DNA of 64,000 nt from assembly GCF_001194135.2 (NCBI RefSeq), contig NC_068981.1, forward strand, positions 57,629,623 to 57,693,622. The letters are read 5' to 3'. The notes under the pieces are model-generated. The model made no database searches. It was not told where the DNA came from and worked only from the letters and a program-made list of their open reading frames with translations. Made by a program: the position numbers and the translations under genes. This document shows, piece after piece, positions 883 through 62,390 of the stretch. This stretch comes from Octopus bimaculoides (lineage: Eukaryota). The first letter of the stretch is position 1; every line of letters starts with the position of its first letter.

Positions 883-1234
883 TTAACTAATCTTCCCCAC
901 TTCATGATTCTGTAATTTAAGCAAAACCAATTTAGCCGAATTGTTAACTGATTCAATTTGCTTCAGGTGGGCATCAACAGCCCATGCAGGATACTGAACA
1001 GCAGACTCCTCAGATTTCAATGAAATAAGGTAATCATGGAGGGAATCTTTTGAGTGAATCGTCTCTTTTTCCTCATTTTTGTCTCCTTTTCCTTCTCCTC
1101 CTCCTATTCTTCTTCTTTGACCTTTTTCTTCTTCTTCTTCTCCTTCTTCTTCTTTATAATCTTCTTGTTCAAGATGTTCATTATAATTTACCCACATAAC
1201 TTCAGTTTCAACTAGATTGTTTGACTTCTCCCTT
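883..1234 (-). CDS. Putative terminal coding exon of the ANKRD60-like gene (acidic, low-complexity)
   Basis: Acceptor ttttttcactgtag|A at 1234. Phase-2 start (1+117 codons) matches the phase-2 array exons upstream. Open to TAA at 883-885; contains ORF 883-1197 (EEEGEEEEEK...). Confidence 0.6.
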
Positions 1235-3088: not shown

Positions 3089-3187
3089 ATTATACATGCA
3101 TTTGAAGATTTGTTCAAACCATCATTAACTTGAATATTTCGAAAACTTTCTGTACCTGGAGATATTTTGCTCTTACGTTTATTAGAC
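3089..3187 (-). CDS. Array exon C of ANKRD60-like gene (99 nt, phase 2-2): SNKRKSKISPGTESFRNIQVNDGLNKSSNACI
   Basis: ttttctttaacag acceptor, GTAAGT donor, length divisible by 3, open frame. Start and adjacent intron are homologous to exons A and B. Confidence 0.7.
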
Positions 3188-4669
3188 CTGTTAAAGAAAA
3201 TGATAGATATATCTTTTAAAATAGTTAATATTTAGACTTCTTTGGTTCACTACCCATTTCCCTCTATATGTTATACTTCAGTCCTCATAACCTCTATCCT
3301 ATAACATTTCTTATAATAGTTGAGACACAGAAAACTGCATAAGATATTTATACATGAAATTTTAAAATCCACCTCTTGGTAACAACTCAAAGTGCTCTCA
3401 AGCAATATTAATGATCCTGGATATAAATGGGGCTAAATTTGGGAACTATTGTTTTAAAAGAGAAGTATCAGGAACAATGTTTCGATTATATTTTCATTTA
3501 CATAAGTGATTCTGAAGCTGCTACTATGAAAGTAATATGTAGATTGGAATTAAAGAATTACAGAATGCAGAAAATCAGAGCAGTTTGTAAGAAATAAGGT
3601 GACGTCAACATCATCATTTAATATCCATGTTCGATGCTGGCATGAGTTGGATTGTTTGACAGGATCTGATGGATCCAAGGACTGCACTGTGTTCATCACT
3701 GTGGCCATCAATGAAGGTAAGTCAGGAAAGATTTGAAGTAGTGCTAGAGTGGAGATGATTAGATGTGTAGTGGCTTCATGCAAGCACAGTGTCGATTTGA
3801 TCCTCGATCACCAAAGTTCACTTAACAGTTCAACTGCACTTTTCTCATGGTAAAACAATAGTTTTTCTGTGAGTGACAGCAGTTACATTTGCCAGATGCC
3901 TTTGCTAAGCAGAATAATGTCTTTGCCACTTGATTCTTCCAACCTTTGCTAGGCCATAAAAGACCCCAACCGAAATTCATTGTTCTCAACAATATGTCTC
4001 ACCTTCTAACTAGTTTTGGATAGTTATAAATACTAGAATTTGGCAAGGCAAAATTAGTTAGTGAACCGCAACGACTAGAGTCATGGCCAAACAGCCAGAA
4101 GGAGAAAGGTCACAATCAGCCAACTATGAAACACATCTTCCCTCAACTCTATAACTTTCACTAGCTCAATTTCTTTTACAACATCATTCTATCACTATCT
4201 ATGGTTTACTACTAAAATAAGAACCTGTACACACATACAGGCTGAAATTAACTTTCTTAACCTCGCATGCTCTTTCAATTATATTACACCTGCCTGTCGA
4301 GGCATGGCATTATATTAAGTAATGGTAAATATATAAATCTGAAGTCAACATCAACTTTGATCACTGTTCTTCTTTCATCTTGTACATCTGCAACAGCAAT
4401 ACCCATTACAATCGCTAACTGCCAACTCCAACATATATCATAATTCAAACTGTTGCACTGGTGATCACTGATTCCACCTTAACCAACCATTACATTTGCC
4501 ATTATAGATGTGTACTGTGTGCAAGATGTGTGATGGAGACAGGTGCCAGCCAGACTCATTACAACAGAGAAACTGAATTGATGAGCCAAGTTCTGAGAGT
4601 AACAGAAAGAGTTGTTGCATAAATGATTAAGAAGAGAACTAACTTAGATGAGATGCAGTTCAAGTCTGT

Positions 4670-5050
4670 GTAAGGATGGTGTACTACAGACACCCTCTTC
4701 CTAATGAGACAGTTGCAAGAGGAGTTCTTAGGTAAGAGTGAACCACTATACCTAGCCTTCATTGATTGGAAAAGGGCATTTGACAGGATACCATGCTGTG
4801 TAGTCTGATGGTCTTAAAGAAACTTAGATGTAGATGAACAGCTTATGAGAGCTGTCCAAACTAGGTACAGATATACTATCAGTAACATGATAGTTGACAA
4901 TGGGTTCAGTGAGAAATTTAACATGCAGGTAGGTGTTCATCAGGGCTTAGTTCCCAATACCTTATTTTAGTTTTCCACACTAACAGATAAGTTCAAGACT
5001 GGTTGCGCATGGGAACTTTTCTATGTTGAAAATTTAGTTCTTATAGCTAA
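4670..5050 (+). mobile_element. Degraded RTE reverse-transcriptase fragment
   Basis: Translation ...TTDTLFLMRQLQEEFLGKSEPLYLAFIDWKRAFDRIP... (RT motif region), with stops. Confidence 0.75.
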
Positions 5051-5274
5051 ACTCCAAACATTGAAGCAGAGAAGTAGGAGGAGGAGACAGTGGACGTGGT
5101 GGTGGTAGTGTGAAACTTGTTTATGTATTTTTTTTATTTCATCTAAAGAGATGAACAAAAGGCAGATAAATTATTTAACACTGCTTTAAAGAACTGTCCA
5201 AAATATTAGCAAAAACAAGAACTTGTTCATACAAAGCAATCCTACAAAAACAGATGATGACAAATTATACAAAC

Positions 5275-5385
5275 AATTTTTTTGTTGGAGGTTCTTTAAC
5301 ACCACCAATATTTTCCTTTAGTCCTTCTGAGTCAATATCCTTAAGAAGATCTGAAAATCTTTCCGAAGTTTCTTCAACAAGTGGT
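5275..5385 (-). CDS. Array exon A (111 nt, phase 2-2): PLVEETSERFSDLLKDIDSEGLKENIGGVKEPPTKK
   Basis: ttttctttcacag acceptor, GTTTGT donor (same hexamer as the exon-2 donor), open frame. Peptide is clearly paralogous to exon B (EGLKENIGGVKEPP vs EGLKEDIEGVNEPP). Confidence 0.7.
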
Positions 5386-6541
5386 CTGTGAAAGAAAATA
5401 TAATAGATATGTTATAAAATATATTCAAATATCTTTAGTTCACCTGCTTGGCTCCATACATCATACTTCATTCCCAGTAATCCCTAATCTACGGGTTTAC
5501 CCAGAAGAGTTGGGTCAGAGAGAACTGTATTAGAAACAATTTCATGAAATCTGAAAACCACCTTTTAGTAATTATGCATAATGCTTTCAAGTAATATTAA
5601 TGATTCTGGATATTAAGAGAGCTATATTTGGGAACAAATGTTTTAAGAAAAGAAGTGATTCTCAAACTGTTAATATGGAAGTAAAATGTAGATTGGAATT
5701 AAAGAATGCAGAAGATCAGTGTGATTTGTAAGAAAGAAGCAACATATCAAGGTCATTTTTCACTGCTTTCTATGCACCATACCATGTTCAATTATGAACA
5801 GTCATGAATTTCAATATGGTAACTAGTGGCATTATAATTTGTGCTCGATCCATGCTGTAAAGTTGTTGGGAATAAAAAGAATGTGATAATTTACTAAATC
5901 AATGCAAAACCTAACATCATACACAAGGCTAACACATATGGTAGTGTCATGCACAGAAGTGGGCATCTCTTGGACCATCATCAAATGTTTCCACTAACTC
6001 TCTCACTCAGTCACTTTCTAATGCAGATGAATATCAAACAGCCCATCCTTCACAACTGCCACAAGAAACTATCCTCTTTCTGCCATGAGCAACACTTCAG
6101 GTCTGCTACCATCAATACTGATACAATGAAATATCAGTATCAACATTTTTTTGGCCATCTTGAAAACGTCTGAACCACTTGTATATTTGTGTGTGGTTCA
6201 TACACTCCTCTCCCTACACTTTCTGCAAGTTTGCGTAGGTCTCTGAGCAGGTATTGCCATGACAACTTTCTCTGTCATGGTCAATGCAATGATCACACGC
6301 TACCCACCGTCCTTCCAAGCACTGCTGCTGTAAGCAGCAGATGTGAGCTAAAATGTTAAACTTTAGTGCACATGCACAGCAGAGTTCAAGGTCAATCTGT
6401 TCCAAGCGGCTTCACTCTGTGTGCTTTAGCTTCATTACTATGGCAACAGTCCAAATACTTATTAATCAGACCTCATGTATTTCAACCTCCTTAAAAAGCA
6501 GTTAAATTATTGAACACTACTTACAAGAATTGTTCAGAATA

Positions 6542-7403
6542 CGAGGTTGTATCAAAAGATCCCTGGACAATTATGTTTAATAAAAAATAAGTTATTTACC
6601 TAAGTTTTAACACCATCTCCTTTGAAATAGTCATCTTACACAGCAACATGCCAATCCCAGAGTTTCTGCCACTTTTGGGATCTGGCCTGGAAGTCATTTT
6701 CCATAAGCGAGTTGAGAACCTTCTGCGATTCACTCTGAATCTTGACAATGATGTTAAAACAGTGATCTCTGAGCAGCTTTATCATCTTGGGGAAGAGATG
6801 GAAGTCTGCAGGTGCTAAATCTGGCAAATAGGGTGGGTGCAGAGACAATATCATGTTGTTTTTGATGAGAAACTCATGAGTGAAGAGAGCTTGGTGAAAA
6901 ATCCAATTCCTCACACTCCACAGATCCAGTCACTTTTGCCAAACATCCTCCCTCAAACACTTCAAAACATCACAGCAGAACTCTCAATTGATGGCCTGGC
7001 CTTCATTGATACATGATACCACATTATTGGGGGTGACACACATGACAGGTCTTCCAGTTTTCTCATCATCTTCCAGGGATGTTCTTCCACTTTTGAAGTG
7101 TTTGTGCCACTCAAAACATTGCATATGACCCATTGCCTCACTGCTGTAAGCTTGCCAAAACATTCTCAATGTCTCTGTAGCAGACTTCCCAAGTTTAACA
7201 CAAAATTTCATGTTGGCTCTTTGTTCATGACAAAATCACAGACTACAGTATACACTTGACCACAAAAACACAAATTTTACAACTTGCAAAGTAAACACAG
7301 CAATGTCACTCAGCACACTATCTCATGAAGTCATTGCTAGCTCTCATTGTGCATGCGGCTGTGTGCTACAGAACTAGTTTAGGAACTTTTTGATACCACC
7401 TCA
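6542..7403 (-). mobile_element. Internally deleted mariner (DD34D-type) transposon
   Basis: Imperfect TIRs CGAGGTTGTATCAAAAG.. / ..TTTTTGATACCACCTCA flanked by TA. HTH segment MKFCVKLGKSATETLRM...FKSGRTSLEDDEKTGRP and catalytic segment HPPYLPDLAPADFHLFPK. Confidence 0.9.
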
Positions 7404-7473
7404 TATAGGCAAAATAAGTTCTAATTCAAACAATGCAAGCCTACAAAAGCAAATGATGACAAATCATACAAAC

Positions 7474-7596
7474 ATGTTTGTCTTTGGAGGTTCATTTACA
7501 CCCTCAATGTCTTCCTTTAATCCTTCTTTATTAATTCCAGATTGATGACTTGTCAAAGTCCTTTCAATATTTGGCATTCTGCTCTCATGTTTAGAC
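7474..7596 (-). CDS. Array exon B (123 nt, phase 2-2): SKHESRMPNIERTLTSHQSGINKEGLKEDIEGVNEPPKTN
   Basis: ttttccttcacag acceptor, GTTTGT donor, open frame, length divisible by 3; homologous flanks. Confidence 0.7.
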
Positions 7597-8288
7597 CTGT
7601 GAAGGAAAACAATAAATATATGTTATAAAGCAATGATATTCAAACATCTCTGGCCCACTACCCATTTGGTTTCATACAGCATATTTCATTTCCAGTGACA
7701 CTTTAGTTCTACCCAGAAGAGTTGAGTCACATAGAACAATATAAAATATCAACAAATGTAATTTGAAATCACTTGTAATGTTCTTAAGCAACATTAATGA
7801 TTCTGAATATAAAGAAAGCTTGATTTAGAATCCAAGGTTTTGAAAGGTATATCTAGAATAATACTTCAAGTATAATTTCATTCTAAATAAGTTACTTTCA
7901 AACTGCTTCTATAGAAGTAAAATGTAGATGAGAATTAAAGTAACACAGAAAATCAATGCAGTTTGTAAGAAATAAGGTAACACATCAAAACTATTTTTCA
8001 CTTCCTTTCATAAATCACATCAAATCAAAATATTGAGATCTGTGAATTTTATATGATATTACATTCACAGCAATCTTCAATGAAGGTTGTTTTGTTTTGT
8101 TTTTTAAATATTTCCATGTATGGAAAGTAATCATAATATTATCCCAGGTCCACATGAAATGTGGCCTAATTATTTGATACTGCTTAAAAGAATTTGCTTA
8201 GGGTAAAGATAGCAGAATGAGGGCAATGATAAAGAGCTGTTTTAATAAATGCAAGCATAGAAGATAGATGATGACAAATTATACAAAC

Positions 8289-8354
8289 ATTTTTTTAAGT
8301 AGAGATTCCGCTAAGTTTTCATGAGTTATTTTTGAATTATCTGTTTCCTTTGCT
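8289..8354 (-). CDS. Array exon D (66 nt, phase 2-2): AKETDNSKITHENLAESLLKK
   Basis: tttcag acceptor, GTTTGT donor. Donor-side intron flank (GATGATGACAAATTATACAAAC on +) is shared with exons A and B. Confidence 0.55.
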
Positions 8355-9202
8355 CTGAAACCTTTTAAATAATAAACGATGATTAAAATAATTGTCATTA
8401 TTAATAGAAATACATGATGAAATTACATTTATAGATAGATATATGCTTTTTAAGAATTAAACTATTTCAAATGATTCCTTTCAGTTTCTACAATGAGAAT
8501 CTATTGTGTTTACTACGGGGGAAAAGCTATGTTGGACTGGTATCCCTATCTAGGAAGTGAATTGCTCTTCAATTGTATTAAGGCTGGAAAAGCTTGAATA
8601 AACACTAGCATCTCTCATATGGTGTATAGAATATTTCTTACAGCAAAATAATAATATAATATATTACATAACATTTAAAACTAGTTGATTTTTTTTTTTC
8701 TTAAATCAAATATCATATCATCATTTCTAATTGTCTTAGTGTTTACTTTTTCCTTCCGACGTAATACAAAATAAATTTTGCCATTTTATTTTTTTCTCTC
8801 CAAAAATTATCATTGATACTTTCCGTAAGATATTTTACAATCAATTCTAAGTTTAATCCAGTAAACCCAGATCTAGATAATAGATGCTCAAGAATTTTTT
8901 TTTTTTTTGTCATTGTTCATATCCATCTTCAGAAATAAACTTTGTTGGAATTAAGTACCATCTACATTTATATGTCACATAATGTAGAGGATGTGTATTA
9001 GATGCAGACATTGTTCACAAATATCTGCAATGGAAGACTTTGCTCAAATTATGCTCAGTCAGCTGTCTCACCAAAGTCCAAGTCTCATACCTTTATCATC
9101 TATACAACAGAAATTTGAGACTGTTACAAAGTATTAAATGATTTGTAAGAAATATATCAATGAATAACAAAATGTTCCTTAAAATGTTCCAACTCAACTT
9201 AC

Positions 9203-9343
9203 TTTTTGCAGGTGTTTTCAATCTTGCAAATTTCTGTCTTGATTGTATTGAACCCAACTGCTTTTCAGCTGCAGTTTTTGCAAATAAAATTGCAATGTTA
9301 ATAGCTGCCCAGCCACTTAAATCCTTTTCTAGGATTTTTATCC
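9203..9343 (-). CDS. ANKRD60: ANKRD60-like exon 5 (second ankyrin repeat): GIKILEKDLSGWAAINIAILFAKTAAEKQLGSIQSRQKFARLKTPAK
   Basis: attccag acceptor (phase 1), GTAAGT donor, 141 nt; continues the frame of exon 4. Confidence 0.75.
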
Positions 9344-9979: not shown

Positions 9980-10078
9980 CTTCAGAAATGAGCAGGTCTA
10001 TAATTTCCTGACGTCCATGAGATGCAGCTATGTGAAGTGCTGTTCGACCCCTTGAAGTTTTTGCTTTGAGATTCACAC
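9980..10078 (-). CDS. ANKRD60: ANKRD60-like exon 4 (ankyrin repeat): GVNLKAKTSRGRTALHIAASHGRQEIIDLLISEG
   Basis: Canonical ankyrin motif GRTALHxAAxxG; ttttacag / GTAAAT sites; 99 nt, phase 1-1. Confidence 0.9.
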
Positions 10079-14647: not shown

Positions 14648-14822
14648 CATGAGCAACCAGTTCTTTGCAAAGTGACAGGAAACCTCGATTAGCTCCAATA
14701 CACAAAGCAACGAAAGCTCTGAAGTCAATCCAGTCTCTTCGAACATCTTCTTCCATAGCTAATATATATTGACTTGTAGGTGCTTCAAATTGAGTGTCAT
14801 GAGTTACTCCTAATCTGAAAAC
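14648..14822 (-). CDS. ANKRD60: ANKRD60-like exon 3: VFRLGVTHDTQFEAPTSQYILAMEEDVRRDWIDFRAFVALCIGANRGFLSLCKELVAHG
   Basis: tttttgaaag acceptor, GTAAGA donor, 175 nt phase 0-1. RAFVAL motif as I recall it from ANKRD60. Confidence 0.85.
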
Positions 14823-16448: not shown

Positions 16449-17020
16449 NNNNNNNNNNNNNNNNNNNNNNNNNNNNNNNNNNNNNNNNNNNNNNNNNNNN
16501 NNNNNNNNNNNNNNNNNNNNNNNNNNNNNNNNNNNNNNNNNNNNNNNNNNNNNNNNNNNNNNNNNNNNNNNNNNNNNNNNNNNNNNNNNNNNNNNNNNNN
16601 NNNNNNNNNNNNNNNNNNNNNNNNNNNNNNNNNNNNNNNNNNNNNNNNNNNNNNNNNNNNNNNNNNNNNNNNNNNNNNNNNNNNNNNNNNNNNNNNNNNN
16701 NNNNNNNNNNNNNNNNNNNNNNNNNNNNNNNNNNNNNNNNNNNNNNNNNNNNNNNNNNNNNNNNNNNNNNNNNNNNNNNNNNNNNNNNNNNNNNNNNNNN
16801 NNNNNNNNNNNNNNNNNNNNNNNNNNNNNNNNNNNNNNNNNNNNTATATATATATATATATAATGAGCTTTTTTCAGAATAAAAGAAAACTTCAAACCTT
16901 TAGAAACCATAGAACGTTTGGAATCATGCAATAAAGAAAGAAGACAAATGTTTCTTTTTTTTCCTTCTTTTCTTAATCTGAGGAGGGACAAGCCAGATAA
17001 AAGTTAAGGCATTTACAAAC

Positions 17021-17145
17021 CTCATAAACATCACCTTTAATTGCTGCTTTTACAAACTCTCTCCATATTGTCCAGACATCAAGATCTACTTCTGTTTTAG
17101 GAAGAATACGGTTTTCTGTAAGGGTTGTGTCATCCAACAAATCTG
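17021..17145 (-). CDS. ANKRD60: ANKRD60-like exon 2: ADLLDDTTLTENRILPKTEVDLDVWTIWREFVKAAIKGDVYE
   Basis: NAGNAG acceptor (cagcag, start 17145 or 17142), GTTTGT donor; completes the ubiquitin-like fold (LDDTTL). Confidence 0.85.
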
Positions 17146-20100
17146 CTGCATTGGACAGGTAAACAGATAAAAAGAGTGTCAGTAAATAGACTCAGAGTCT
17201 TTTCTATAAAATACAGGGAATGTTAGTTACCACTACTACATTGTAACTTTAAAGAAGAAGCCATGGAAAGAGTTGATATTTATCAATTGTTGCAAGGAAA
17301 TTATATTTATTAAATGTGTGTAAACGTATGTCATTCTATCTGTTTGTATGACTATGTGGTTAAGCAGTTCACTTTGAAAATACATGGTGCCAGGTTTGAT
17401 CTCACAACACAGCACATTTGGCAAATACCCTCAGATTGACTGATACCTTGTAAGCGGCATTTGATAGTCAAAAACCCATAATATTTATACACACACACAA
17501 ACATACGTGTGTGTGTGTGCGTGTGTGTTTGTGCATGTACATCTTTCACCTGTGTACCTCAAGGAAAGATATAAAGAACAAGGAGGAAAACAGAAAAATG
17601 ATATTTTTATGAAGTTCCTGGAGATATTTTTTCCCCACTGAGTTTTCTTATTATCAGAAATGCAGTGAACGAAGGGGTGGCCAGTTGGAAATTTGGAACC
17701 AGTAACCCTATTGTTTACATATTGCAATATGCAATATATAAAATATTTATTAATCATTTAATTATACTGCCAGTAAATGAACAATATGCAAATTAGTTTA
17801 ACCATTTCAGTTAGATCTTGGTTTGTGTTTGATTTAGTGTTAGCTATTCAGTTCTCTTCATTCAAGATAAAAAGGGGTATATCTTCCTATCATTTATCCC
17901 TCCATCACTCTTCTAACAACTGCATTATTCTGTAATCAATTAAGAGCAGAACTACATGTACCATCATCCTCTCTTGTGCTACTAATTATCTTTCCCTCTT
18001 CTCTGAACTACTGCCTCTTGACATCTATCCCCTTATTCTTCACACCACTCATATTATCCACTGACTACCCTTTCTATGCTGCCAGTATCACTCCCTTTCC
18101 TTAGAGACACTTCCTGTTAACACCCATATTTCATTAAGAACACCATTTCATACTACCATCAATCACTCTGACATTTTTGCCATTCACTTCATTCAAACCT
18201 ATGTACGTCTAACCACTCCAACTCCATCATTGTGTCTTTCACTCTCCCACCAACTCCTGCGATCTTTGGCCTTCTACCTCCACCCATTATTTTTCCATCT
18301 CTCATCCCTCCCCTATTAATTATATTAGTCTGCTGCTCTTGGGTGTAAAATCTAGGCCAGTGTTTCCAACCTATTTTCTCCCAGGCCTCACTATAACTTC
18401 CCAGAAAAATGTATTCCTCACTGGTGGTTAGAAAAGAACAACTTTATTTTTAATATTTTATCAAAATTATTTTATACAAAAGCATCTACCAGTAACTCTT
18501 TTATTAAGCACTGAGGGTAGAAATGATAATACCATATTGGATGAACCTTACTTTGTCTATATTTCTTATATTAGATAAAGGAACAAGGACCTTCGGCTAG
18601 CCATGACAATTGTTTCGATTGCCACCATAAGAGATAGACCATCTGATCCCAAAATAATTCAGGTTTTCCCAATCTGTATTTGAAATTGTAGTAATCATTC
18701 TTCTGCCTTACAATCTAATATGTTTATGTAACTACTATAATTTGCCTTTATATTCATAGTGTATAAGCACACTCTTTATTTTGGACATACCAACTCTTGA
18801 TCACTATATGTACATATGTACATATGGATGGATGCATTAATGGTATGCATGTCTGTAGAGTACTCAGCCACTTGCAAGTTAATTTTATCCTCATGTGGTA
18901 ATGAAAAGTGAAAGTGACATCCAATATTTGCTGTAGTTATTTGTCTTTGATTTAACAATATCTATGTATCAACTTTCTTTTGATCTATGTATCTATCTCT
19001 TTCACTTCCTCTGTGTACCTCTTCTCTCCCACTTTTAATTTAACAATGTGTGTATGTATCAACTTTTCTTTTGATCTCTGTATCTACTTTTCTTGTGATG
19101 TGATAAACATTTAAAAACAAAACGAACGCCATCACCACTCACTGTCTCTTTCTCTCTTACTTCCTCTCTGAAACAATTATATAACACAAAACGAACACCA
19201 TCACCACTCAATGTCTCATTCACTCTCTCTTACTTCCTCTCTCTCACTTCTTCTTTTGAAGTGTAACACACACTACTGGTACGTACAAAACAAACAAAAC
19301 TAAGTGTATTAATATTATTGACATATACACCCTGAACTCTAATCATCTATTTCTCTCCTCCTCTCACATCACACTAGTGGAGTTAACCACTCACTCTTCC
19401 TAATCCCTTGTCTATTCTTTCTTATACTCACCTTCTTGTATTTTGAAAGTATGTTCTGACACTTCATCACTATCAGTTTTCTTTCCAGTTACTTCCACCC
19501 TTATATAACACAAGGCAACCATGTATCTCCTCTACAGCAAGACACCTGTGCCCGTTCATCTGTCATACTTCAGCATCTCAACACTGGGCATAGAGTCACT
19601 TCCCTGTCTACTGCAATCCCATTCAGTTGAAGAGTCATTTTCTTTGTCTTGCGAGTTAATCAGCAACCTCACTAGTGCCAATATTTTGTCTGTGTGAACA
19701 TTCTGAGTTCAAATTCCACCAAGGTTGACTTTGCCTATCATCCTTGTGCCTTTAGTAGAAAGGATATTAGGAAAGGCATCCAGCTGTAGAAATCATGTCA
19801 AAACAAATACTGGAGCCTAATGCAGTCTTCCAGTTCACTAGATCCTGTCAAACCATCCAACCCATGCCAGCATAGAAGATGGACATGAAATGATAATCCT
19901 TTCTACTAAAGGTACAAGGCCTGAAATTTGGGGGAAGGAGCTAGTTGATTTCATCAACCCAATGTGTAACTGGTACTTATTTAACTGACCTCGGCGGAAT
20001 TTGAACTCAGAACGTAGCAGCAGATGAAATACTGCTAAGCATTTCGCCCAGTGTGCTAATGATGATGATGATGATGACTGAAATACATGTGTGTGTATGA

Positions 20101-25373: not shown

Positions 25374-26291
25374 NNNNNNNNNNNNNNNNNNNNNNNNNNN
25401 NNNNNNNNNNNNNNNNNNNNNNNNNNNNNNNNNNNNNNNNNNNNNNNNNNNNNNNNNNNNNNNNNNNNNNNNNNNNNNNNNNNNNNNNNNNNNNNNNNNN
25501 NNNNNNNNNNNNNNNNNNNNNNNNNNNNNNNNNNNNNNNNNNNNNNNNNNNNNNNNNNNNNNNNNNNNNNNNNNNNNNNNNNNNNNNNNNNNNNNNNNNN
25601 NNNNNNNNNNNNNNNNNNNNNNNNNNNNNNNNNNNNNNNNNNNNNNNNNNNNNNNNNNNNNNNNNNNNNNNNNNNNNNNNNNNNNNNNNNNNNNNNNNNN
25701 NNNNNNNNNNNNNNNNNNNNNNNNNNNNNNNNNNNNNNNNNNNNNNNNNNNNNNNNNNNNNNNNNNNNNNNNNNNNNNNNNNNNNNNNNNNNNNNNNNNN
25801 NNNNNNNNNNNNNNNNNNNNNNNNNNNNNNNNNNNNNNNNNNNNNNNNNNNNNNNNNNNNNNNNNNNNNNNNNNNNNNNNNNNNNNNNNNNNNNNNNNNN
25901 NNNNNNNNNNNNNNNNNNNNNNNNNNNNNNNNNNNNNNNNNNNNNNNNNNNNNNNNNNNNNNNNNNNNNNNNNNNNNNNNNNNNNNNNNNNNNNNNNNNN
26001 NNNNNNNNNNNNNNNNNNNNNNNNNNNNNNNNNNNNNNNNNNNNNNNNNNNNNNNNNNNNNNNNNNNNNNNNNNNNNNNNNNNNNNNNNNNNNNNNNNNN
26101 NNNNNNNNNNNNNNNNNNNNNNNNNNNNNNNNNNNNNNNNNNNNNNNNNNNNNNNNNNNNNNNNNNNNNNNNNNNNNNNNNNNNNNNNNNNNNNNNNNNN
26201 NNNNNNNNNNNNNNNNNNNNNNNNNNNNNNNNNNNNNNNNNNNNNNNNNNNNNNNNNNNNNNNNNNNNNNNNNNNNNNNNNNNNNNNNNNN
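25374..26291. other. Assembly gap (other gaps: 16449-16844, 28335-28457, 42289-42468, 50182-50869, 51611-52184)
   Basis: N runs; ORFs spanning them are artefacts. Confidence 1.
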
Positions 26292-26829
26292 NTTTTTTCT
26301 TTGTAGGGAATTTCATTAAAAAATATCCATTTTCTTGAAAGTTAAGACGAATTGGACTCCGGTGAATTTTTCGAAATTCCCCACCTCAACCCCCTCCTAA
26401 AACACTTTCCCCACAAAATTTTGTATATTCGGAATCTACTTGATATAAAACATATTCGTAGAAAATTTCATTAAAAAATATCCACTTTTCTGAAAGTTAT
26501 AATCATCCAAAGTCGGGGGTGCAGAAATCTGGAGTTATGCCAAATGAAATGTTAGCACCAAGAAGTGTTTAGGCATAAACAAAATTTAGGTAAGTTAAAA
26601 TATGATTGTGACAGAAGGATACTAGAAGTTTTTAAATGTCAATACTTCCCAATTTTGCTTCTCGAAACCAGGTGTCACACGCATTTAATACATTAAAGAT
26701 TTTATCCCTATAAATTATGATTAAACACTTTATTTATTCGAAGAGAAGGTTGAATCAACTCTAAAACGACATACACTTATACTAGAGTGAAGTTTCAATT
26801 AACTCACGCACTGAATTTAATCATTTTAC

Positions 26830-27025
26830 CTGCATCCAAGTAGCTTAGTTTTTGTAGACTGTATGGTATTCCAGTAACTAATTCCAAATGATCTTTGAGT
26901 TCTGAAATTTTCATTTTCAACGAAACATAGACATTATAAACATCGACTTTCAATAGTCTGATCTTTATCGAAACTGGATGAGTATTTTTCCATGTAAGTT
27001 TATATTTATCTCTTGGCTTGGACAT
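26830..27025 (-). CDS. ANKRD60: ANKRD60-like exon 1 (ubiquitin-like domain N-half)
   Basis: MKISELKDHLELVTGIPYSLQKLSYLDA matches the recalled ANKRD60 segment ([23 protein letters not shown]); donor AG|GTAAAA, 196 nt, phase 1. Confidence 0.85.
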
Positions 27026-27293: not shown

Positions 27294-41542
<14,249 letters not shown>

Positions 41543-42189: not shown

Positions 42190-42685
42190 TAGGCATAGGA
42201 GTGGCTGTCTGGTAAGTAGCTTGCTTACCAACCACATGGTTGCGGGTTCAGTCCCACTGCATAGCATCTTGGGCAAGTGTCTTCTATTNNNNNNNNNNNN
42301 NNNNNNNNNNNNNNNNNNNNNNNNNNNNNNNNNNNNNNNNNNNNNNNNNNNNNNNNNNNNNNNNNNNNNNNNNNNNNNNNNNNNNNNNNNNNNNNNNNNN
42401 NNNNNNNNNNNNNNNNNNNNNNNNNNNNNNNNNNNNNNNNNNNNNNNNNNNNNNNNNNNNNNNNNNNNTATATATATACGCGTGTGTGTTTGTCCTCTCA
42501 ACATCGCTTGACAACCGATGCTGGTATGTTTACGTCCCCATAACTTAGCGGTTCGGCAAAAGAGACCAATAAAATAAATACTAGGTTTCCAAAGAATAAG
42601 TCCTGGGGTCGATTTGCTCAACTAAAGGCAGTGCTCCAGCATGGCCACAGTCAAAAGACTGAAACAAGTAAAAGAGTAAAGAGAG
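42190..42685 (+). mobile_element. tRNA-headed SINE with internal (TA)n (gap-spanning)
   Basis: Head GGAGTGGCTGTCTGGTAAG...GGTTGCGGGTTCAGTCCC; 3' part CTCCAGCATGGCCACAGTCAAAAGACTGAAACAAG also occurs inverted at about 16150-16450. Confidence 0.8.
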
Positions 42686-43528: not shown

Positions 43529-46315
43529 TCATTTGTACGATCTGGAGTTATTGTCTCTATATTGATCATACTGATCAGTCCACCCACTTTTGTTTCTATT
43601 TTGGTTATAACCATAGTTTCCACCACCTCGCGGATTAAATCTTCTGTTATATCCTCCGCCTCCACCACCTCTGTTCTGTTGCCTATAACCTCCTCCCCCT
43701 CCATAACGATTTCCAGAGTAACCACTGCTGTTGTAACTGTCATTGTTCCAATTCATCAACATTGGAGGAGGATTATTATAATTTCTTCCTTGATATAACT
43801 CCAAAGGTGGGGGAATCCTAGCACCATCTCCAGAGTAGCCTTGTTGTGTAGGTTGTTGATTCGGCTGATTGGTACTGTGGCGTATCATTCGTACCATTGC
43901 ATTAACATCTGTTTCACGGTACCCAGAGTTTCTCTGAAATCCTAATTGAGGTCTATATGGCTGATTACGATTTTTCCTATCATAGTCAGATGGTTTGATT
44001 GAGGGTGGTGGGAAAACAGCATTACGCAAAACTTTAGCAGAAAACAAAAAGTCATCACCATATTGTGGGTCAGTAAAATATACACACAATGCTTGGTTTT
44101 TAAAATCCTTCAATTTTGAAAGAGGTGAGAAGAAAGTGTGGCCTGGTAAAACAGCAGTGTTATCACACCAAACAATACCTGCCATACCATCAGCTAACTT
44201 TGGATTAATCTGTGACTTCACACTATATAGATTTTGCTCGTATAAAGAATCAAAGAAACTGTGAATTGGATTTTTACAACCAACAAACAATCGGTCACTA
44301 CCTCTGGTATTCCTAAGTTTTTCTTCACTTGTAAGATCATCATAAACAGTGCTAAGAGCTTTCTTTAGCCTAATTTCATCAACAAAAGGAAGAAGAGCTA
44401 CTCCTTGCCAAGCATATTTCTTGCCATTAAGATCAACTTTAAAATCAGTAGGATAAAAGTCAATAACTGGAGAATCCTCATCAACCATCAATCGCTGCCA
44501 AGTAACAGGTAAGAATTGACGACTAGCTGCTGGAAAAACTCCCATTAGCTGCTCTAAAGGTTTAAATGGTTCAGTGTTTTTTTCAAATTCATTTGATAGA
44601 TCACCTACATTTAAAAAATCTGAGGCAAATGGTGCATAATGATATGGAAAATACCACTTCCAACTGGAACATCCTTGATAGTAGTACCTCAAAACCCAAC
44701 AGAGTCCACGTACATAATGATTAGCAACTTGATGCCGAAAAGCAACATCATCCTTATCAACATCAAATTTTGACTTATAATACCTGTCCTTCCAACCATT
44801 TTCCCAGAGTTTTACATCATCTGCTGGCTCATCTTCTTCTTCATCGTCTTCATGCTTACGTTTGTTAGATTGGCTTCGTTCAGATTCATTTCTGGAAGAA
44901 TTATCAGAGTGATTCTGTTTTGAACCATATGTCATTTTACGCATATCTGCTGCTGTTTGACGAGGATTTTGAACTGGGTCCCTATTACTTCCAACTGCTG
45001 ATGGGGCATATTGTCCTCCAAGCATCCATTTTGGTTTATCTCCAAATTTAGCTCTCTTATTTTGCTTTTCTCGGCGCCGATATTCAATATCTCTTTGACG
45101 ACGATTTTTGAAAATTTCATCCTCCACTTTTCCCAACTCTGACAGTACAAATTGTACTCTATCCAACTTTACCACACCATCCTCAGTCAGATATCCTCCA
45201 GTTCTGTAAACACACCTTTTATAAATGCCAACAAGACGATCAATAGCTCCCTCTCTGATTTCCAATGATGGCAGATGAGGTAAGAAATCATTACCAACAA
45301 AAAAGCACATGAAGACCCAGTCATCGACAGCTCGTTCAAAATCGTATTTAAAGGGGAGCCCATCCATATGGAGTTGTAGTTGTAAGTGTTCTCTTAATAC
45401 ACACAATCGGATAAAAATGAACTCTTGTTCTGAACCCAATGCTTTTTCAAGTGGTTTGTCACATTCTTCTTTTGGTAATCCAACACATTCTGTCATTTCA
45501 TGACCTAACTGCCCGCATAGCTCACATGGTCTGGGTTGATTATATTTGAATTCTTCTCTTATTATAGTAAAATGTGGTTCATGTGTTGCCAGTCCCAACA
45601 TTATCAAATCAGCGTCGGCTCCACAGAGACAGTGATGCGTATTTGGATCATGGTCAGGTTGGGCTCTCTGTCGTCGAATATAATCCATAATTTTATGTTC
45701 TCCTTCTCCTGGAACATTTGCATCAGAAAGAATTACTTTGATGTTTTCCCATCCAGGTGCATTATTTAAGCGATCGTAGACGTAATAGCGAAGACATTCA
45801 GCAAGACGAAACATAAATGGAGTACCTGGAGTAATACAATTACTATCGAATCTTTCACCTTTTTCTTTCGGTGGTGGTAAATGGTAGCCTTTAGACAAAA
45901 GTTCATCTCGTAGTTTAGATTTTTCGAATTCGCTTTCAACTGCTTCTTTGGAAGAACGAAATCTCCGTGAACGCTGCTGGTTCATTTTTGCACGTGGAGC
46001 CACACCGTCGATGGCCATATACAAAAGCTTACGGGGTCGGCAAATGTTAAAAATTCTATCGATATATTCAAAAATATCAATCATCATTTCGTCTTCATTT
46101 GCGGGAGCAGGTTTGTTTTCAGGGTGACAACATGGATGAATAATGCCATTCATGTCTAAATATAGGTTATCAAATTCAACATCGTTCGGGTTCGGCTTAC
46201 TAGCGTCTACTGGTACTGTTGTGTCCTCAATTTCTTTTGGCTTCTCTTCCACACAATGTACAACAATTGATGTATACTTACGGCTTAGCCATCTGAAAAA
46301 TGCTGGAACTCCCAT
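43529..46315 (-). CDS. XRN2: 5'-3' exoribonuclease 2 (Rat1 ortholog), single-exon CDS, 928 aa
   Basis: MGVPAFFRWLSRKY start; catalytic motifs LYLDMNGIIH, DGVAPRAKMNQQRSRRFR, PGEGEHKI, GADADLIML, GNDFLPH; CCHC knuckle CELCGQLGHEMTEC; G/R/Y-rich C-terminus. No stop or intron across 2787 nt. Confidence 0.98.
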   Translation of the reverse strand: MGVPAFFRWLSRKYTSIVVHCVEEKPKEIEDTTVPVDASKPNPNDVEFDNLYLDMNGIIHPCCHPENKPAPANEDEMMIDIFEYIDRIFNICRPRKLLYMAIDGVAPRAKMNQQRSRRFRSSKEAVESEFEKSKLRDELLSKGYHLPPPKEKGERFDSNCITPGTPFMFRLAECLRYYVYDRLNNAPGWENIKVILSDANVPGEGEHKIMDYIRRQRAQPDHDPNTHHCLCGADADLIMLGLATHEPHFTIIREEFKYNQPRPCELCGQLGHEMTECVGLPKEECDKPLEKALGSEQEFIFIRLCVLREHLQLQLHMDGLPFKYDFERAVDDWVFMCFFVGNDFLPHLPSLEIREGAIDRLVGIYKRCVYRTGGYLTEDGVVKLDRVQFVLSELGKVEDEIFKNRRQRDIEYRRREKQNKRAKFGDKPKWMLGGQYAPSAVGSNRDPVQNPRQTAADMRKMTYGSKQNHSDNSSRNESERSQSNKRKHEDDEEEDEPADDVKLWENGWKDRYYKSKFDVDKDDVAFRHQVANHYVRGLCWVLRYYYQGCSSWKWYFPYHYAPFASDFLNVGDLSNEFEKNTEPFKPLEQLMGVFPAASRQFLPVTWQRLMVDEDSPVIDFYPTDFKVDLNGKKYAWQGVALLPFVDEIRLKKALSTVYDDLTSEEKLRNTRGSDRLFVGCKNPIHSFFDSLYEQNLYSVKSQINPKLADGMAGIVWCDNTAVLPGHTFFSPLSKLKDFKNQALCVYFTDPQYGDDFLFSAKVLRNAVFPPPSIKPSDYDRKNRNQPYRPQLGFQRNSGYRETDVNAMVRMIRHSTNQPNQQPTQQGYSGDGARIPPPLELYQGRNYNNPPPMLMNWNNDSYNSSGYSGNRYGGGGGYRQQNRGGGGGGYNRRFNPRGGGNYGYNQNRNKSGWTDQYDQYRDNNSRSYK

Positions 46316-46533
46316 GTTTGATTCACAAATATCTTAACAAACAGCGAGACACTCAATCGCAACGCTCAAGTTACGATAAACAATGGCTGTTTATACATTT
46401 CCGGTATCCATGGGCGAAAAGCTAACTTCCGTTTAATTTTGCAGTTAAGATTCTTGAAACATTAATATCTATATTTTTGTTTGTATGCAATACACGTTAA
46501 TTCTTATTTTAAAATATATTGGAATAAAAAAAA

Positions 46534-49952: not shown

Positions 49953-51017
49953 TAAATGTATTTATATACCCTAGAAAGGCATGCTGCTGTAGTTTTTATC
50001 TGAGAGAAAATCTCGTCATAGACATGTTAAAAACAATGTATATCAAAGCGAAATAAGCACCATCGCAGAATGACTCATGGGACACATTTCACTTTTCTTG
50101 GGAGCTTGTCAATAATATGTATCAATTTGTCAAGTGCTTGAATGAAATTCATGTCCTGATATGCAAAAAAAGAGCGAATATNNNNNNNNNNNNNNNNNNN
50201 NNNNNNNNNNNNNNNNNNNNNNNNNNNNNNNNNNNNNNNNNNNNNNNNNNNNNNNNNNNNNNNNNNNNNNNNNNNNNNNNNNNNNNNNNNNNNNNNNNNN
50301 NNNNNNNNNNNNNNNNNNNNNNNNNNNNNNNNNNNNNNNNNNNNNNNNNNNNNNNNNNNNNNNNNNNNNNNNNNNNNNNNNNNNNNNNNNNNNNNNNNNN
50401 NNNNNNNNNNNNNNNNNNNNNNNNNNNNNNNNNNNNNNNNNNNNNNNNNNNNNNNNNNNNNNNNNNNNNNNNNNNNNNNNNNNNNNNNNNNNNNNNNNNN
50501 NNNNNNNNNNNNNNNNNNNNNNNNNNNNNNNNNNNNNNNNNNNNNNNNNNNNNNNNNNNNNNNNNNNNNNNNNNNNNNNNNNNNNNNNNNNNNNNNNNNN
50601 NNNNNNNNNNNNNNNNNNNNNNNNNNNNNNNNNNNNNNNNNNNNNNNNNNNNNNNNNNNNNNNNNNNNNNNNNNNNNNNNNNNNNNNNNNNNNNNNNNNN
50701 NNNNNNNNNNNNNNNNNNNNNNNNNNNNNNNNNNNNNNNNNNNNNNNNNNNNNNNNNNNNNNNNNNNNNNNNNNNNNNNNNNNNNNNNNNNNNNNNNNNN
50801 NNNNNNNNNNNNNNNNNNNNNNNNNNNNNNNNNNNNNNNNNNNNNNNNNNNNNNNNNNNNNNNNNNNNNCATCCAGCTGTAGAAACTCTGCCAAATTAGA
50901 TTGGAGCTTGGTGTTGCCATCCGGTTTCACCAGTCCTCAGTCAAATCGTCCAACCCATGCTAGCATGGAAAGCGGACGTTAAACGATGATGATGATGATG
51001 ATATATATATATATATC

Positions 51018-51480: not shown

Positions 51481-52184
51481 AATCAAAGAAAAAAATTTTA
51501 TTCTATTATTCTGTAAAATAATATTTAATTAGTTTAAATGTATACAAATGCATAAAAATAATTTTTAATTCCATTAGACATTCTAAAATACTATTAAATT
51601 TCATTCAATTNNNNNNNNNNNNNNNNNNNNNNNNNNNNNNNNNNNNNNNNNNNNNNNNNNNNNNNNNNNNNNNNNNNNNNNNNNNNNNNNNNNNNNNNNN
51701 NNNNNNNNNNNNNNNNNNNNNNNNNNNNNNNNNNNNNNNNNNNNNNNNNNNNNNNNNNNNNNNNNNNNNNNNNNNNNNNNNNNNNNNNNNNNNNNNNNNN
51801 NNNNNNNNNNNNNNNNNNNNNNNNNNNNNNNNNNNNNNNNNNNNNNNNNNNNNNNNNNNNNNNNNNNNNNNNNNNNNNNNNNNNNNNNNNNNNNNNNNNN
51901 NNNNNNNNNNNNNNNNNNNNNNNNNNNNNNNNNNNNNNNNNNNNNNNNNNNNNNNNNNNNNNNNNNNNNNNNNNNNNNNNNNNNNNNNNNNNNNNNNNNN
52001 NNNNNNNNNNNNNNNNNNNNNNNNNNNNNNNNNNNNNNNNNNNNNNNNNNNNNNNNNNNNNNNNNNNNNNNNNNNNNNNNNNNNNNNNNNNNNNNNNNNN
52101 NNNNNNNNNNNNNNNNNNNNNNNNNNNNNNNNNNNNNNNNNNNNNNNNNNNNNNNNNNNNNNNNNNNNNNNNNNNNNNNNNNNN

Positions 52185-60097: not shown

Positions 60098-60523
60098 TAA
60101 TGCACATCATATCACTGAAAGACGTTTTAATGCTTAGCACAGAATTATATTTATATATTATATGTATAACATATTTAATAATAAGATGTTATGACGTAAA
60201 GCTGGAATAAAATGTCCAAATATTGTAATTTAACACATGATATTTATACATACTTTTTGCACTAATGTTTCTATTTCTAAAGTCATACCATTTTCTAAAC
60301 AAGAAAAACTACTTTACTCTTCATTTCCTATCATCACCTGTCAAAATTGATTAGAAGAGTGTCAAACAAAATACCTGTAATGTTAATTTAATTGTGCCAC
60401 GTTTTGTATTAATTTAAAATTCTGTTGAAGCCAACATTGTTTCATTTTTCTGGAGTTAATAAAAAATTATCAGTCAACTGCTGGGGTTAATTTAATACTT
60501 CTATAAGGCCTCCTAGATATAAT

Positions 60524-60860
60524 CATCAACATCATTTAACATCTGTTTTCCATGATGGCATGGGTTGGACAGTTTGACAGGAGCTGCCCAAGCTCCATGT
60601 CTGTTTTGGTATGATTTTGGATACAACAATTTGGAGATATGTGTTTGTGTGCTAATATTGAACTGTGGGAATGAGTGTTCAACATCGCACTGGTGGACAA
60701 ATGTAGCATGGCTGTTCGCACACACGCGTCATACAGTCTACCTTTTACTTTGAACGAGAGGCCCTTCGTCACCAACAGAGGTAGGCGCTCTCTGAACTTT
60801 GCCCAGGTTATTCTTATTCTAGCAGCTACACTCTCAGAGCATCCACCTACACTAGTGTCT
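60524..60860 (-). mobile_element. RTE remnants (RT C-terminal region and 3' tail)
   Basis: GGCSESVAARIRITWAKFRERLPLLVTKGLSFKVKGRLYDACVRTAMLH. Confidence 0.8.
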
Positions 60861-61949: not shown

Positions 61950-62390
61950 CGTCGTCATCGTTTAACGTCCACTTTCCATGCTGGCATGGGTTGAACGGTT
62001 TGACTGAGGGCTGGCAAGCCAGAAGGCTGCACCAGGTTCCAATCTGATCTGGCAAAGTTTCTACAGCTGGATGCCCTTCCTAACGCCAACCACTCTGAGA
62101 GTGTAGTGGGTGCTTTTTACGTGCCACTGGCATGAGGGCCAGTCAGGTGGTACTGACATTGACCACGGTTGAATGGTGCTTTTTACATACCACTGGCATG
62201 GGAGCCAGTCAGGCGGCACTGGCAATGACCACGCTCAAATGGGACTTTTTATGTGTCACCTGCACAGGAGCCAGACAGGCAGCACTGATATCGACCACAA
62301 TCGAATGGAGTATTTTACATGACACAGGCACGGGTGCCAATCGGGCAGTATTGGCGACTTCACTTGACTCAATATTAGCCGTATAGTTTG
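61950..62390 (-). mobile_element. RTE 3'-UTR copy
   Basis: CATCGTTTAACGTCCACTTTCCATGCTGGCATGGG start and tandem GCCAGTC..ACTGGC units. Confidence 0.85.

What the first reader, a model, noticed from the sequence alone, without database searches (positions are those of the whole stretch)
3089..8354. Tandem array of four duplicated, symmetric phase-2 exons extending an ANKRD60-like protein
Seen: four minus-strand segments (8289-8354, 7474-7596, 5275-5385, 3089-3187) each have an AG acceptor, a GT donor, a length divisible by 3 and an open frame in the same phase (2-2). Their introns are mutually homologous over hundreds of bases: 3188-3620, 5386-5830 and 7597-8050 share blocks such as AATATTAATGATTCTGG and ATGTAGATTGGAATTAAAG, and the donor flanks of D, B and A share GATGACAAAT(T/C)ATACAAAC. 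The D-to-B spacing of about 815 bp suggests the original repeat unit; TEs were inserted later. The exons have diverged in sequence while all keeping their frames. Knowledge: vertebrate ANKRD60 is short and ends soon after the ankyrin repeats. Inference: lineage-specific growth of a charged, disordered tail by exon tandem duplication, allowing combinatorial cassette or mutually exclusive splicing.
Basis: partly seen in the sequence, partly recalled or inferred. Interest (0 to 1): 0.72.

Follow-up and report, generated by a model that had tools for sequence, protein, structure and literature searches.

The report
Triplicated exon-intron segment in ANKRD60 tail
A 0.8-kb piece of an ANKRD60-like gene, running from inside one small tail exon to inside the next, was copied three times in tandem, which made two extra frame-compatible hybrid exons; this is an ordinary case of exon duplication, and nothing here shows that the extra exons are used.

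Summary
Four minus-strand AG..GT segments have lengths divisible by 3, and one frame is open in all four. Three ~440-bp intron blocks are 70-74% identical, and the unit occurs nowhere else in the 64-kb window. The gene is an ANKRD60 orthologue.

The interpretation needs four corrections.
1. The array is three copies of an ~815-bp unit whose ends lie inside exons. D and C are the parental exons. B and A are C-5'/D-3' hybrids.
2. The last ankyrin exon (9343-9203) ends in phase 1. D as delimited (start 8354) is therefore out of frame, with a stop after 9 codons. An acceptor at 8361 or 8352 makes D a phase 1-to-2 exon and gives one 494-aa ORF.
3. A long charged tail built from small exons with these phases is ancestral. 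Lottia has the same phase order, and invertebrate orthologues are 444-572 aa. The window's terminal exon (1234-883) matches their terminal exon.
4. Ka/Ks is ~0.8-1, no database protein matches the exons, and no basis for mutually exclusive splicing was found.

ORF retention and in-frame length changes modestly favour real cassette exons. There is no expression evidence.

The parts
26830..27025 (-). E0: first coding exon of the ANKRD60-like gene (ATG at 27025; ubiquitin-like domain); ends in phase 1.
   Evidence: tblastn with 13 orthologues. Sequence and boundaries. Weak Pfam ubiquitin match at residues 20-85.
17021..17145 (-). E1: ends GAG|GTTTGTAA, the same unusual donor type as D, B and A.
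   Evidence: Homology. Lottia has an intron at the same position. Boundaries.
14648..14822 (-). E2: linker plus first ankyrin repeat.
9980..10078 (-). E3: ankyrin repeat.
   Evidence: Pfam Ank
9203..9343 (-). E4: last ankyrin exon, 141 nt, donor AAA|GTAAGT, ends in phase 1. It lacks the conserved C-terminal module (HQxxDSK..W..PGEFxG..AP), which in Lottia is part of the same exon.
8289..8361 (-). Exon D. The donor is fixed at 8289|gt. Starts 8361 (73 nt) and 8352 (64 nt) are phase 1-to-2 and in frame with E4; start 8354 is not. Only 8308-8289 belongs to the repeat.
7597..8288 (-). Intron D-B, 692 bp: the intact copy of the repeat's intron. 8050-7597 is homologous to 5830-5386 and to 3603-3188.
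7474..7596 (-). Exon B, 123 nt, phase 2-2, a hybrid. The first 70 nt (7596-7527) are C-like and the last 20 nt (7493-7474) are D-like.
6539..7406 (.). Mariner insertion in intron B-A, with 26-nt inverted ends and an HTH_48 Mos1 transposase fragment. It splits the post-donor flank of B: 6541-6493 continues the homology to 5205-5157.
5831..6492 (.). Second stretch of intron B-A with no counterpart in the intact unit. By eye it holds a mariner-like HTH remnant, which no tool confirmed.
   Evidence: No homology to the other units. Pfam gave no hit for 6217-6411.
5275..5385 (-). Exon A, 111 nt, phase 2-2, a hybrid like B. Its last 20 nt plus donor flank are 80% identical to D, including a 31-nt block at 97%.
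3604..5156 (.). Stretch of intron A-C with no counterpart in the intact unit. Its end at 3605-3668 is a dispersed element with at least 6 other copies in the window, and 4604-4670 resembles 34122-34188.
   Evidence: Reverse-transcriptase-like motifs are seen by eye on the plus strand at 4674-4967, but Pfam gave no hit.
3089..3187 (-). Exon C, 99 nt, phase 2-2, strong donor AAT|GTAAGT. Its upstream intron and its first 79 nt belong to the repeat; its last 20 nt and what follows do not.
883..1234 (-). Exon T: terminal coding exon with a phase-2 acceptor after a long pyrimidine tract; 116 codons plus a TAA stop at 885-883. It matches the orthologues' terminal exon (..LRLYLRSLG..SYExWL..).
   Evidence: Ranks 1 of 3746 six-frame ORFs against the tail profile (10.6 bits, E 0.14). 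At most 1 of 3000 composition-preserving shuffles reaches the real score. Acceptor phase is the same as in Lottia.

Best explanation
The window holds the orthologue of ANKRD60 on the minus strand: a ubiquitin-like domain, ankyrin repeats, and a charged tail encoded by small exons.

Proposed origin. Between the last ankyrin exon (E4, donor in phase 1) and the terminal exon (T, acceptor in phase 2) the gene originally had two small exons. D was a phase 1-to-2 exon and C was a phase 2-2 exon, separated by a ~690-bp intron. This is the order seen in the limpet Lottia. A segment of ~815 bp, running from 20 nt before the end of D to about 79 nt into C, was then duplicated in tandem. A second round, probably unequal crossing-over between the two copies, made three copies.

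Consequences. Each internal junction created a hybrid exon (B, then A) with C's acceptor and 5' part and D's 3' part and donor. Both ends are phase 2 and the junction kept the frame, so B and A can be included or skipped without a frameshift. Mariner and other elements later inserted into two of the three intron copies.

Product. If every exon is used, the product is 494 aa. The array contributes about 130 residues of charged, polar sequence with few aromatic residues, probably disordered.

Shown:
- the duplication and its break-points;
- the gene's identity;
- the phases;
- the single long ORF;
- the orthology of T.

Inferred:
- that D uses an in-frame acceptor (8361 or 8352);
- that B and A are actually spliced in, most likely as optional cassette exons under weak constraint that preserves length and frame but not residues.
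For: Repeat and break-points.

Gene identity: Lottia LOTGIDRAFT_73337 is 45% identical over 100% of the E1-E4 query, and Latimeria ANKRD60 is 41%. Pfam finds Ank and ubiquitin.

Architecture in Lottia (L001): a phase-1 donor, a 61-nt 1-to-2 exon, a 2-2 exon, then a phase-2 terminal exon.

Orthology of T: rank 1 of 3746 ORFs, with 0-1 of 3000 shuffles reaching the real score.

One ORF of 494 aa runs from ATG 27025 to the stop at 883 when D starts at 8352 (M1). That length is close to the gastropod orthologues, 481-495 aa.

Frames and lengths: one of six frames is open in all four exons. Neutral retention has probability 0.003-0.04. Exon length differences of 12 and 24 nt are all multiples of 3, against 6 of 21 intron indels.

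Splice sites:
- Acceptors of B, A, C and T score in the top 1%.
- The GTTTGT donor type is also used by the homology-supported exon E1.
- The donor flank is 82% identical over 60 nt between B and A, and a 31-nt block is 97% identical between D and A. The introns are 70-74% identical.
Against: There is no transcript or protein evidence.
- The D-B-A-C peptide and the T peptide have no match among 5.8 billion proteins.
- The T ORF is not on record.
- No cephalopod ANKRD60 protein turned up.

Sequence-level constraint is not seen.
- Ka/Ks between the paralogous exons is 0.8-1.0.
- The exon is no better conserved than the intron: B-A is 62% in the exon and 74% in the intron.

Splice-site problems.
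- With the best-looking acceptor of D (CAG at 8357-8355, exon start 8354), the E4-D junction is out of frame. The in-frame acceptors are AAG and GAG, which are weaker contexts.
- Donors of D, B and A score only in the 40th-71st percentile of all GT sites on a vertebrate-style matrix.

Other points.
- D, B, A and C show no detectable similarity to the orthologues' middle-tail exons.
- The gene has lost the conserved C-terminal module, so it may be evolving freely or decaying.
Confidence: 0.59

Rival explanations
1. The triplication is real but B and A are silent intronic pseudo-exons. The mature mRNA joins E4 to D, then to C and/or T. The open frames of B and A have simply not yet been hit by a stop.
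For: Ka/Ks is 0.8-1.0 and exon divergence is at least as high as in the intron. For B and A alone, neutral retention of the frame is not rare: about 0.15 at per-branch d = 0.15 and 0.05 at d = 0.25. Their donors are weak on a generic matrix. No protein in any database contains them.
Against: Their acceptors are among the best in the window. The donor flank is conserved above the intron level. Length differences are in frame. All other five frames are closed in at least three of the four exons.
Confidence: 0.3
2. The ANKRD60-like gene is decaying or truncated in this lineage. The protein ends shortly after E4, by read-through (stop at 9101-9099) or by the out-of-frame E4-D junction (stop after 9 codons). 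The D-B-A-C-T frames are then relics.
For: The conserved C-terminal module is missing. E4 is only 28% identical to Lottia, whereas E2 and E3 are 54-56% identical. The strongest acceptor of D gives a frameshift (M2). Bird orthologues are short, 253-257 aa.
Against: T still matches the orthologues' terminal exon beyond composition and has kept a 116-codon frame and a top-1% acceptor in the ancestral phase. E0-E4 are intact, with good splice sites and a start codon. Two in-frame acceptors exist for D.
Confidence: 0.08
3. The unit is a dispersed repeat (a transposable element or satellite) that happens to lie three times in this intron, and the exon-like features are coincidental.
For: This could not be excluded genome-wide with the tools at hand. 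The region is rich in transposable elements.
Against: There is no copy elsewhere in the 64-kb window, whereas genuine dispersed elements there have 6-10 copies. The copies are head to tail and in register, with the intact spacing of one unit. There are no terminal repeats, no coding capacity typical of a transposable element, and no Rfam match. The array ends fall inside D and C.
Confidence: 0.03

Closest known systems
Tandem exon duplication as a source of cassette or alternative exons (general phenomenon described by Kondrashov and Koonin 2001 and by Letunic, Copley and Bork 2002; cited from my own knowledge, not checked here)
   Same: Adjacent homologous exons with their flanking introns, kept splice sites, symmetric phase, and a frame kept through in-frame indels.
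   Different: The break-points lie inside two different neighbouring exons, so the new exons are hybrids of the two neighbours rather than copies of one exon. No alternative splicing has been shown.
ANKRD60 orthologues of other bilaterians (Lottia LOTGIDRAFT_73337, Haliotis XP_046558870, Bradybaena BFZ13542, Owenia, Saccoglossus, Antedon, Branchiostoma, Macrostomum)
   Same: Ubiquitin-like domain, ankyrin repeats, shared intron positions in E0-E3, a phase-1 donor before the tail, a phase-2 terminal exon with the LRLYLxSLG...YxxW motif region, and an overall length near 480-495 aa.
   Different: The conserved module HQxxDSK..W..PGEFxG..AP is missing and E4 is cut short by a donor. The [YF][ED]xWL motifs are degenerate. 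The middle tail exons have no detectable similarity to those of the orthologues, and there are two more of them.
Dscam-type clusters of mutually exclusive exons with a docking site and selector sequences
   Same: Several related exons in a row. One site in the upstream intron (8951-8969) is 16/19 complementary to the best conserved block of each repeated intron.
   Different: The duplexes are weak (-12 to -16.5 kcal/mol) and are not the best in that intron. Only two to three variants exist. The exons differ in length and are poorly conserved.

Membership tests
ANKRD60 orthologue | N-terminal ubiquitin-like domain followed by ankyrin repeats, with best matches to ANKRD60 proteins over the full length. 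| tested here: met
   45% identity to Lottia and 41% to Latimeria ANKRD60 over 100% of the E1-E4 query. Ank_2 at 2.6e-10; ubiquitin at 1.6e-4, below Pfam's cut-off.
ANKRD60 orthologue | Conserved post-ankyrin module ERHLFLFxWQxRA...HQxxDSK..W..G..Q.Y...LPPGEFxG...AP. | tested here: not met
   A profile of 15 orthologues finds nothing in any of 3746 six-frame ORFs. tblastn also finds nothing. Only a degenerate AEKQLGSIQSRQKFARLK remains in E4.
ANKRD60 orthologue | Intron positions and phases shared with a mollusc orthologue, including phase 1 before the tail and a phase-2 terminal exon. | tested here: met
   Lottia locus L001 compared with the window.
ANKRD60 orthologue | Terminal exon homologous to that of the orthologues. 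| tested here: met
   Rank 1 of 3746 ORFs, E 0.14. 1 of 3000 and 0 of 3000 shuffles reach the real score. The match is weak in bits but specific.
Tandem exon duplication | Neighbouring exons and their introns are homologous, head to tail, in one gene. | tested here: met
Tandem exon duplication | The duplicated exons keep splice sites, the frame, and a phase that allows inclusion. | tested here: met
Tandem exon duplication | The duplicated exons are present in transcripts. | not testable with these tools
   No RNA data for this organism. Protein searches were empty.
Tandem exon duplication | Purifying selection on the encoded residues. | tested here: not met
   Ka/Ks is 0.82 (B-A), 0.96 (B-C) and 1.59 (A-C), from short and uncertain alignments.
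Mutually exclusive exon cluster (docking/selector type) | A docking site that pairs with a selector upstream of each variant, better than background. | tested here: not met
Dispersed transposable element | Many copies at unrelated sites. | tested here: inconclusive
   None in the other 58 kb of the window. The rest of the genome is not available.

The most novel reading that the evidence does not exclude
B, A and C are optional cassette exons used in combination. This cephalopod would then make up to eight tail variants of a cilia- or sperm-associated ANKRD60 protein, and the hybrid exons would be evolving fast under diversifying rather than relaxed selection, after the ancestral C-terminal module was replaced.
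Probability: 0.1. Interest if true: 0.45.

Novelty: new member of a known kind. Interest (0 to 1): 0.25.

Why it matters
If B and A are used, this is a dated, step-by-step example of a disordered protein tail growing through an intragenic duplication whose break-points lie inside two different exons. That kind of event yields hybrid exons rather than simple copies. ANKRD60 has no described function; it is listed only as a candidate multiciliation gene (PMC8470418).

The practical value is for annotation.
- The gene model should join E4 to a D that starts at 8361 or 8352, not 8354.
- It should end in exon T (1234-883).
- The orthologue has lost the family's conserved C-terminal module.

Beyond that the finding is ordinary.

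Tried and rejected
1. C/D-box snoRNA on the plus strand, suggested by TGATGA in the conserved donor flank. Rfam gave only sub-threshold hits: snoZ194 at 21.6 bits (E 9.5) and snoZ159 at 23.7 bits (E 1). The CTGA box is not conserved between units. Rejected.
2. Docking/selector pairing for mutually exclusive splicing. There is a 16/19 complementarity between 8951-8969 and the conserved intron block, but its duplex energy is not better than other windows of the same intron. Rejected.
3. Antisense coding. Only exon A is open on the plus strand. Rejected.
4. A bridging exon between E4 and D. The best candidate is 9099-9072 (28 nt). It would give TGA when joined to D, and nothing supports it. It is not needed once D's alternative acceptors are considered.
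5. An alternative E4 donor 4 nt downstream (AA|GTTGAG). It restores the frame with D at 8354 (M6), but it is a very poor donor. Kept only as a remote option.
6. Homology of D, B, A or C to the orthologues' middle-tail exons or to the [YF][ED]xWL motif. None was found.
7. Homology between the two ~1.6-kb insertions, prompted by the near-equal intron lengths of 2088 and 2087 bp. None was found, so the equal lengths are coincidence.
8. Protein database searches with the D-B-A-C peptide, the T peptide and the T ORF. All were empty.
That search was used instead with the Lottia protein, which found the long-tailed orthologues.
10. Pfam on the presumed reverse-transcriptase fragment in intron A-C. 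No hit.

Full report
OBSERVATION

- D, 8354-8289, 66 nt.
- B, 7596-7474, 123 nt.
- A, 5385-5275, 111 nt.
- C, 3187-3089, 99 nt.

Only one of the six frames is open in all four. It starts at the second base of each segment, so both flanking introns are phase 2.

The introns upstream of B, A and C are homologous over 410-610 bp at 65-68% by BLAST and at 70-74% in a MAFFT alignment. The quoted sequence blocks and the donor flank are found as repeat families. The unit has no other copy in the 64-kb window, while real dispersed elements in the same region have 6-10 copies.

AG..GT segments divisible by 3 and open in that frame are frequent by chance, 95 in 6.7 kb. The evidence is therefore their homologous position behind very good acceptors (top 1% for B, A and C), not those properties themselves.

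THE GENE

The exons at 27025-26830, 17145-17021, 14822-14648, 10078-9980 and 9343-9203 encode an ANKRD60 orthologue.
- Identity is 45% to Lottia LOTGIDRAFT_73337 and 41% to Latimeria ANKRD60, each over the whole E1-E4 query.
- Pfam finds Ank repeats and a weak ubiquitin-like domain.

A full HMMER search with the Lottia protein found full-length orthologues of 444-572 aa in Haliotis, Bradybaena, Owenia, Saccoglossus, Antedon, Branchiostoma and Macrostomum. All of them share two features:
- a conserved post-ankyrin module (ERHLFLFxWQxRA...HQxxDSK..W..PGEFxG..AP);
- a charged tail of 155-285 residues, which in most of them carries one to three [YF][ED]xWL motifs.

A long charged tail is therefore the ancestral state. 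The short vertebrate proteins of 250-280 aa are the derived ones. This removes the premise of 'lineage-specific growth of a tail'.

ARCHITECTURE IN LOTTIA

I fetched the Lottia locus (L001) and mapped its exons.
- Introns in the first four coding exons are at the same positions as in the window.
- The last ankyrin exon runs on through the conserved module and ends in phase 1 (GAT G|gtaaga).
- Next comes a 61-nt exon that goes from phase 1 to phase 2.
- Next comes a phase 2-2 exon carrying FDDWL.
- Last is a terminal exon with a phase-2 acceptor.

THE WINDOW'S TAIL

At 1234-883 there is an exon (T) behind a long pyrimidine tract, with a phase-2 acceptor, 116 codons and a stop.
- It is the best of 3746 six-frame ORFs of the window against a profile of the orthologues' terminal exons. 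The alignment is collinear over hmm positions 15-88, at 10.6 bits and E 0.14.
- Only 1 of 3000 and 0 of 3000 composition-preserving shuffles reach its score.
- I take T to be the orthologous terminal exon.

The conserved post-ankyrin module is absent from the window. E4 is cut short by a consensus donor (AAA|GTAAGT), and reading through that donor stops after 35 codons.

THE FRAME PROBLEM

E4 ends in phase 1. D, B, A, C and T all need phase 2.
- Three AGs lie within 11 nt upstream of D: aaAG|GGTTTCAG|AG|CAAAGG.
- A start at 8361 (73 nt) or at 8352 (64 nt) makes D a phase 1-to-2 exon in its own open frame.
- With 8352, the exons E0-E4, D, B, A, C and T form a single ORF of 494 aa from the ATG to the stop in T (M1).
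- Without B, A and C it is 383 aa (M4).

This is the same phase order as in Lottia: a phase-1 donor, a short 1-to-2 exon, a 2-2 exon or exons, then a phase-2 terminal exon. D is therefore not a symmetric cassette. It has to be constitutive for any long product. Which acceptor is used cannot be decided from sequence: the middle CAG looks best, and it is the one that breaks the frame.

WHAT WAS DUPLICATED

Local alignments show where the homology runs.
- Homology between D and B or A covers only the last 20 nt of D (8308-8289) plus 67-77 nt after the donor.
- Homology between C and B covers the upstream intron plus the first 79 nt of C, matching the first 70 nt of B.
- D's 5' part and upstream intron are unique. 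So are C's last 20 nt, its GTAAGT donor and everything downstream.

The array is thus three tandem copies of a segment that starts inside D and ends inside C. D and C are the parental exons. B and A are hybrids that carry C's acceptor and 5' part and D's 3' part and donor.

The intact intron D-B (692 bp) plus a hybrid exon gives the 815-bp period. Introns B-A (2088 bp) and A-C (2087 bp) were enlarged by unrelated insertions:
- a mariner with 26-nt inverted ends and an HTH_48 domain at 6539-7406, which splits B's post-donor flank;
- a second stretch at about 5831-6492;
- a 1.55-kb block at 3604-5156 that contains pieces repeated elsewhere in the window.

ARE B AND A CODING?

For:
- The frame is kept in all copies. 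Neutral retention of all four has probability 0.04 at intron-like divergence and 0.003-0.02 at the divergence seen in the exons.
- The length differences of 12 and 24 nt are multiples of 3, while only 6 of 21 intron indels are.
- The acceptors are excellent.
- The donor flank is more conserved than the intron: 82% over 60 nt for B-A, and a 31-nt block at 97% for D-A.
- The unusual GTTTGT donor is also used by exon E1, whose boundary is fixed by homology and by the Lottia intron.

Against:
- Ka/Ks is 0.82 (B-A) and 0.96 (B-C).
- Exon identity for B-A is 62%, no higher than the intron's 74%.
- Nothing in 5.8 billion proteins matches the D-B-A-C peptide or T, and no cephalopod ANKRD60 protein was returned either. 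The databases searched are therefore uninformative for this organism.

The encoded 132 residues (D with its 8352 start, plus B, A and C) are 17% K+R, 17% D+E, 40% S/T/N/Q/G/P and 1.5% aromatic. That composition suits a disordered tail in which length and frame matter more than residues. I put about 0.59 on real, at least optionally included exons. I put 0.3 on silent pseudo-exons.

SPLICING MODE

Symmetric phase 2 lets B, A and C be skipped or included freely. Nothing points to mutual exclusion.
- The introns are long.
- All splice sites are of the ordinary GT-AG type.
- Inclusion of several of these exons keeps the frame.
- The single docking-like site (8951-8969, 16/19 complementary to the best conserved intron block) forms duplexes of only -12 to -16.5 kcal/mol. 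Other windows of the same intron do better.

A snoRNA reading of the conserved donor flank was also rejected.

COMPARISON AND VERDICT

This is a tandem intragenic duplication that produced extra exons, a well-known route of gene evolution. The slightly unusual points are that the break-points lie inside two neighbouring exons, so the new exons are in-frame hybrids, and that the host gene has lost its family's conserved C-terminal module.

ANKRD60 itself is uncharacterised. The literature held here mentions it only as a candidate multiciliation gene and in association scans.

Novelty: a new member of a known kind. Interest is low to moderate (0.25), mainly for gene annotation. RNA-seq junctions and a comparison with other cephalopod genomes would settle it.

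Noticed in passing
window 43532-46333 (-): An uninterrupted 934-aa ORF with XRN_N (1e-103) and XRN_M (6e-165) domains, beginning MGVPAFFRWLSRKY. That is 2.8 kb without an intron, next to a gene whose introns are 0.7-9.7 kb. It could be one very large exon or a retrocopy of a 5'-3' exoribonuclease.
   Followed up: partly
window 9099-9343 (-) compared with L001 12045-12430: The last ankyrin exon of the ANKRD60-like gene is cut short by a consensus donor and lacks the conserved module HQxxDSK..W..PGEFxG..AP, which in Lottia is part of the same exon. Read-through stops after 35 codons. This exon is also far more diverged than the other exons (28% against 54-56% identity to Lottia).
   Followed up: partly
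window 3188-5274 and 5386-7473: Introns A-C and B-A are 2087 and 2088 bp long, although the ~1.6 kb inserted into each is unrelated. This is apparently coincidence.
   Followed up: yes
window 8951-8969 vs 7920-7938, 5684-5702 (and 3535-3553): One site in the E4-D intron is 16/19 complementary to the best conserved block of each repeated intron, which looks like a docking/selector arrangement. The duplex energies are not better than background.
   Followed up: yes
window 3605-3668; also 19840-19897, 37616-37671, 55067-55126, 60523-60586, 61955-62004, 63542-63600: The end of a short dispersed element (about 56-64 nt, 78-88% identical), present at least seven times in the window on both strands. 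It is probably a SINE-like family.
   Followed up: no
window 17021 (E1 donor), 8289, 7474, 5275: The homology-supported exon E1 uses the donor GAG|GTTTGTAA. The donors of D, B and A are the same non-consensus GTTTGT type, so this type seems to work in this organism.
   Followed up: partly
window 16449-16844, 25374-26292, 28335-28457, 42289-42468, 50182-50869, 51611-52184: Six runs of N (assembly gaps). Two lie in introns of the ANKRD60-like gene and could hide small exons upstream of the finding. None lies between E4 and the window start.
   Followed up: no
window 62109-62346: A tandem repeat of a 66-bp unit, 3.6 copies, 74% matches, inside a region of GC-richer repeats whose translations recur at 59.8, 62.1 and 63.6 kb.
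   Followed up: no
window 1107-1154: A (TTC)n/(GAA)n microsatellite inside terminal exon T encodes the poly-Glu stretch EEEGEEEEE, so the length of the acidic run is probably polymorphic.
   Followed up: no
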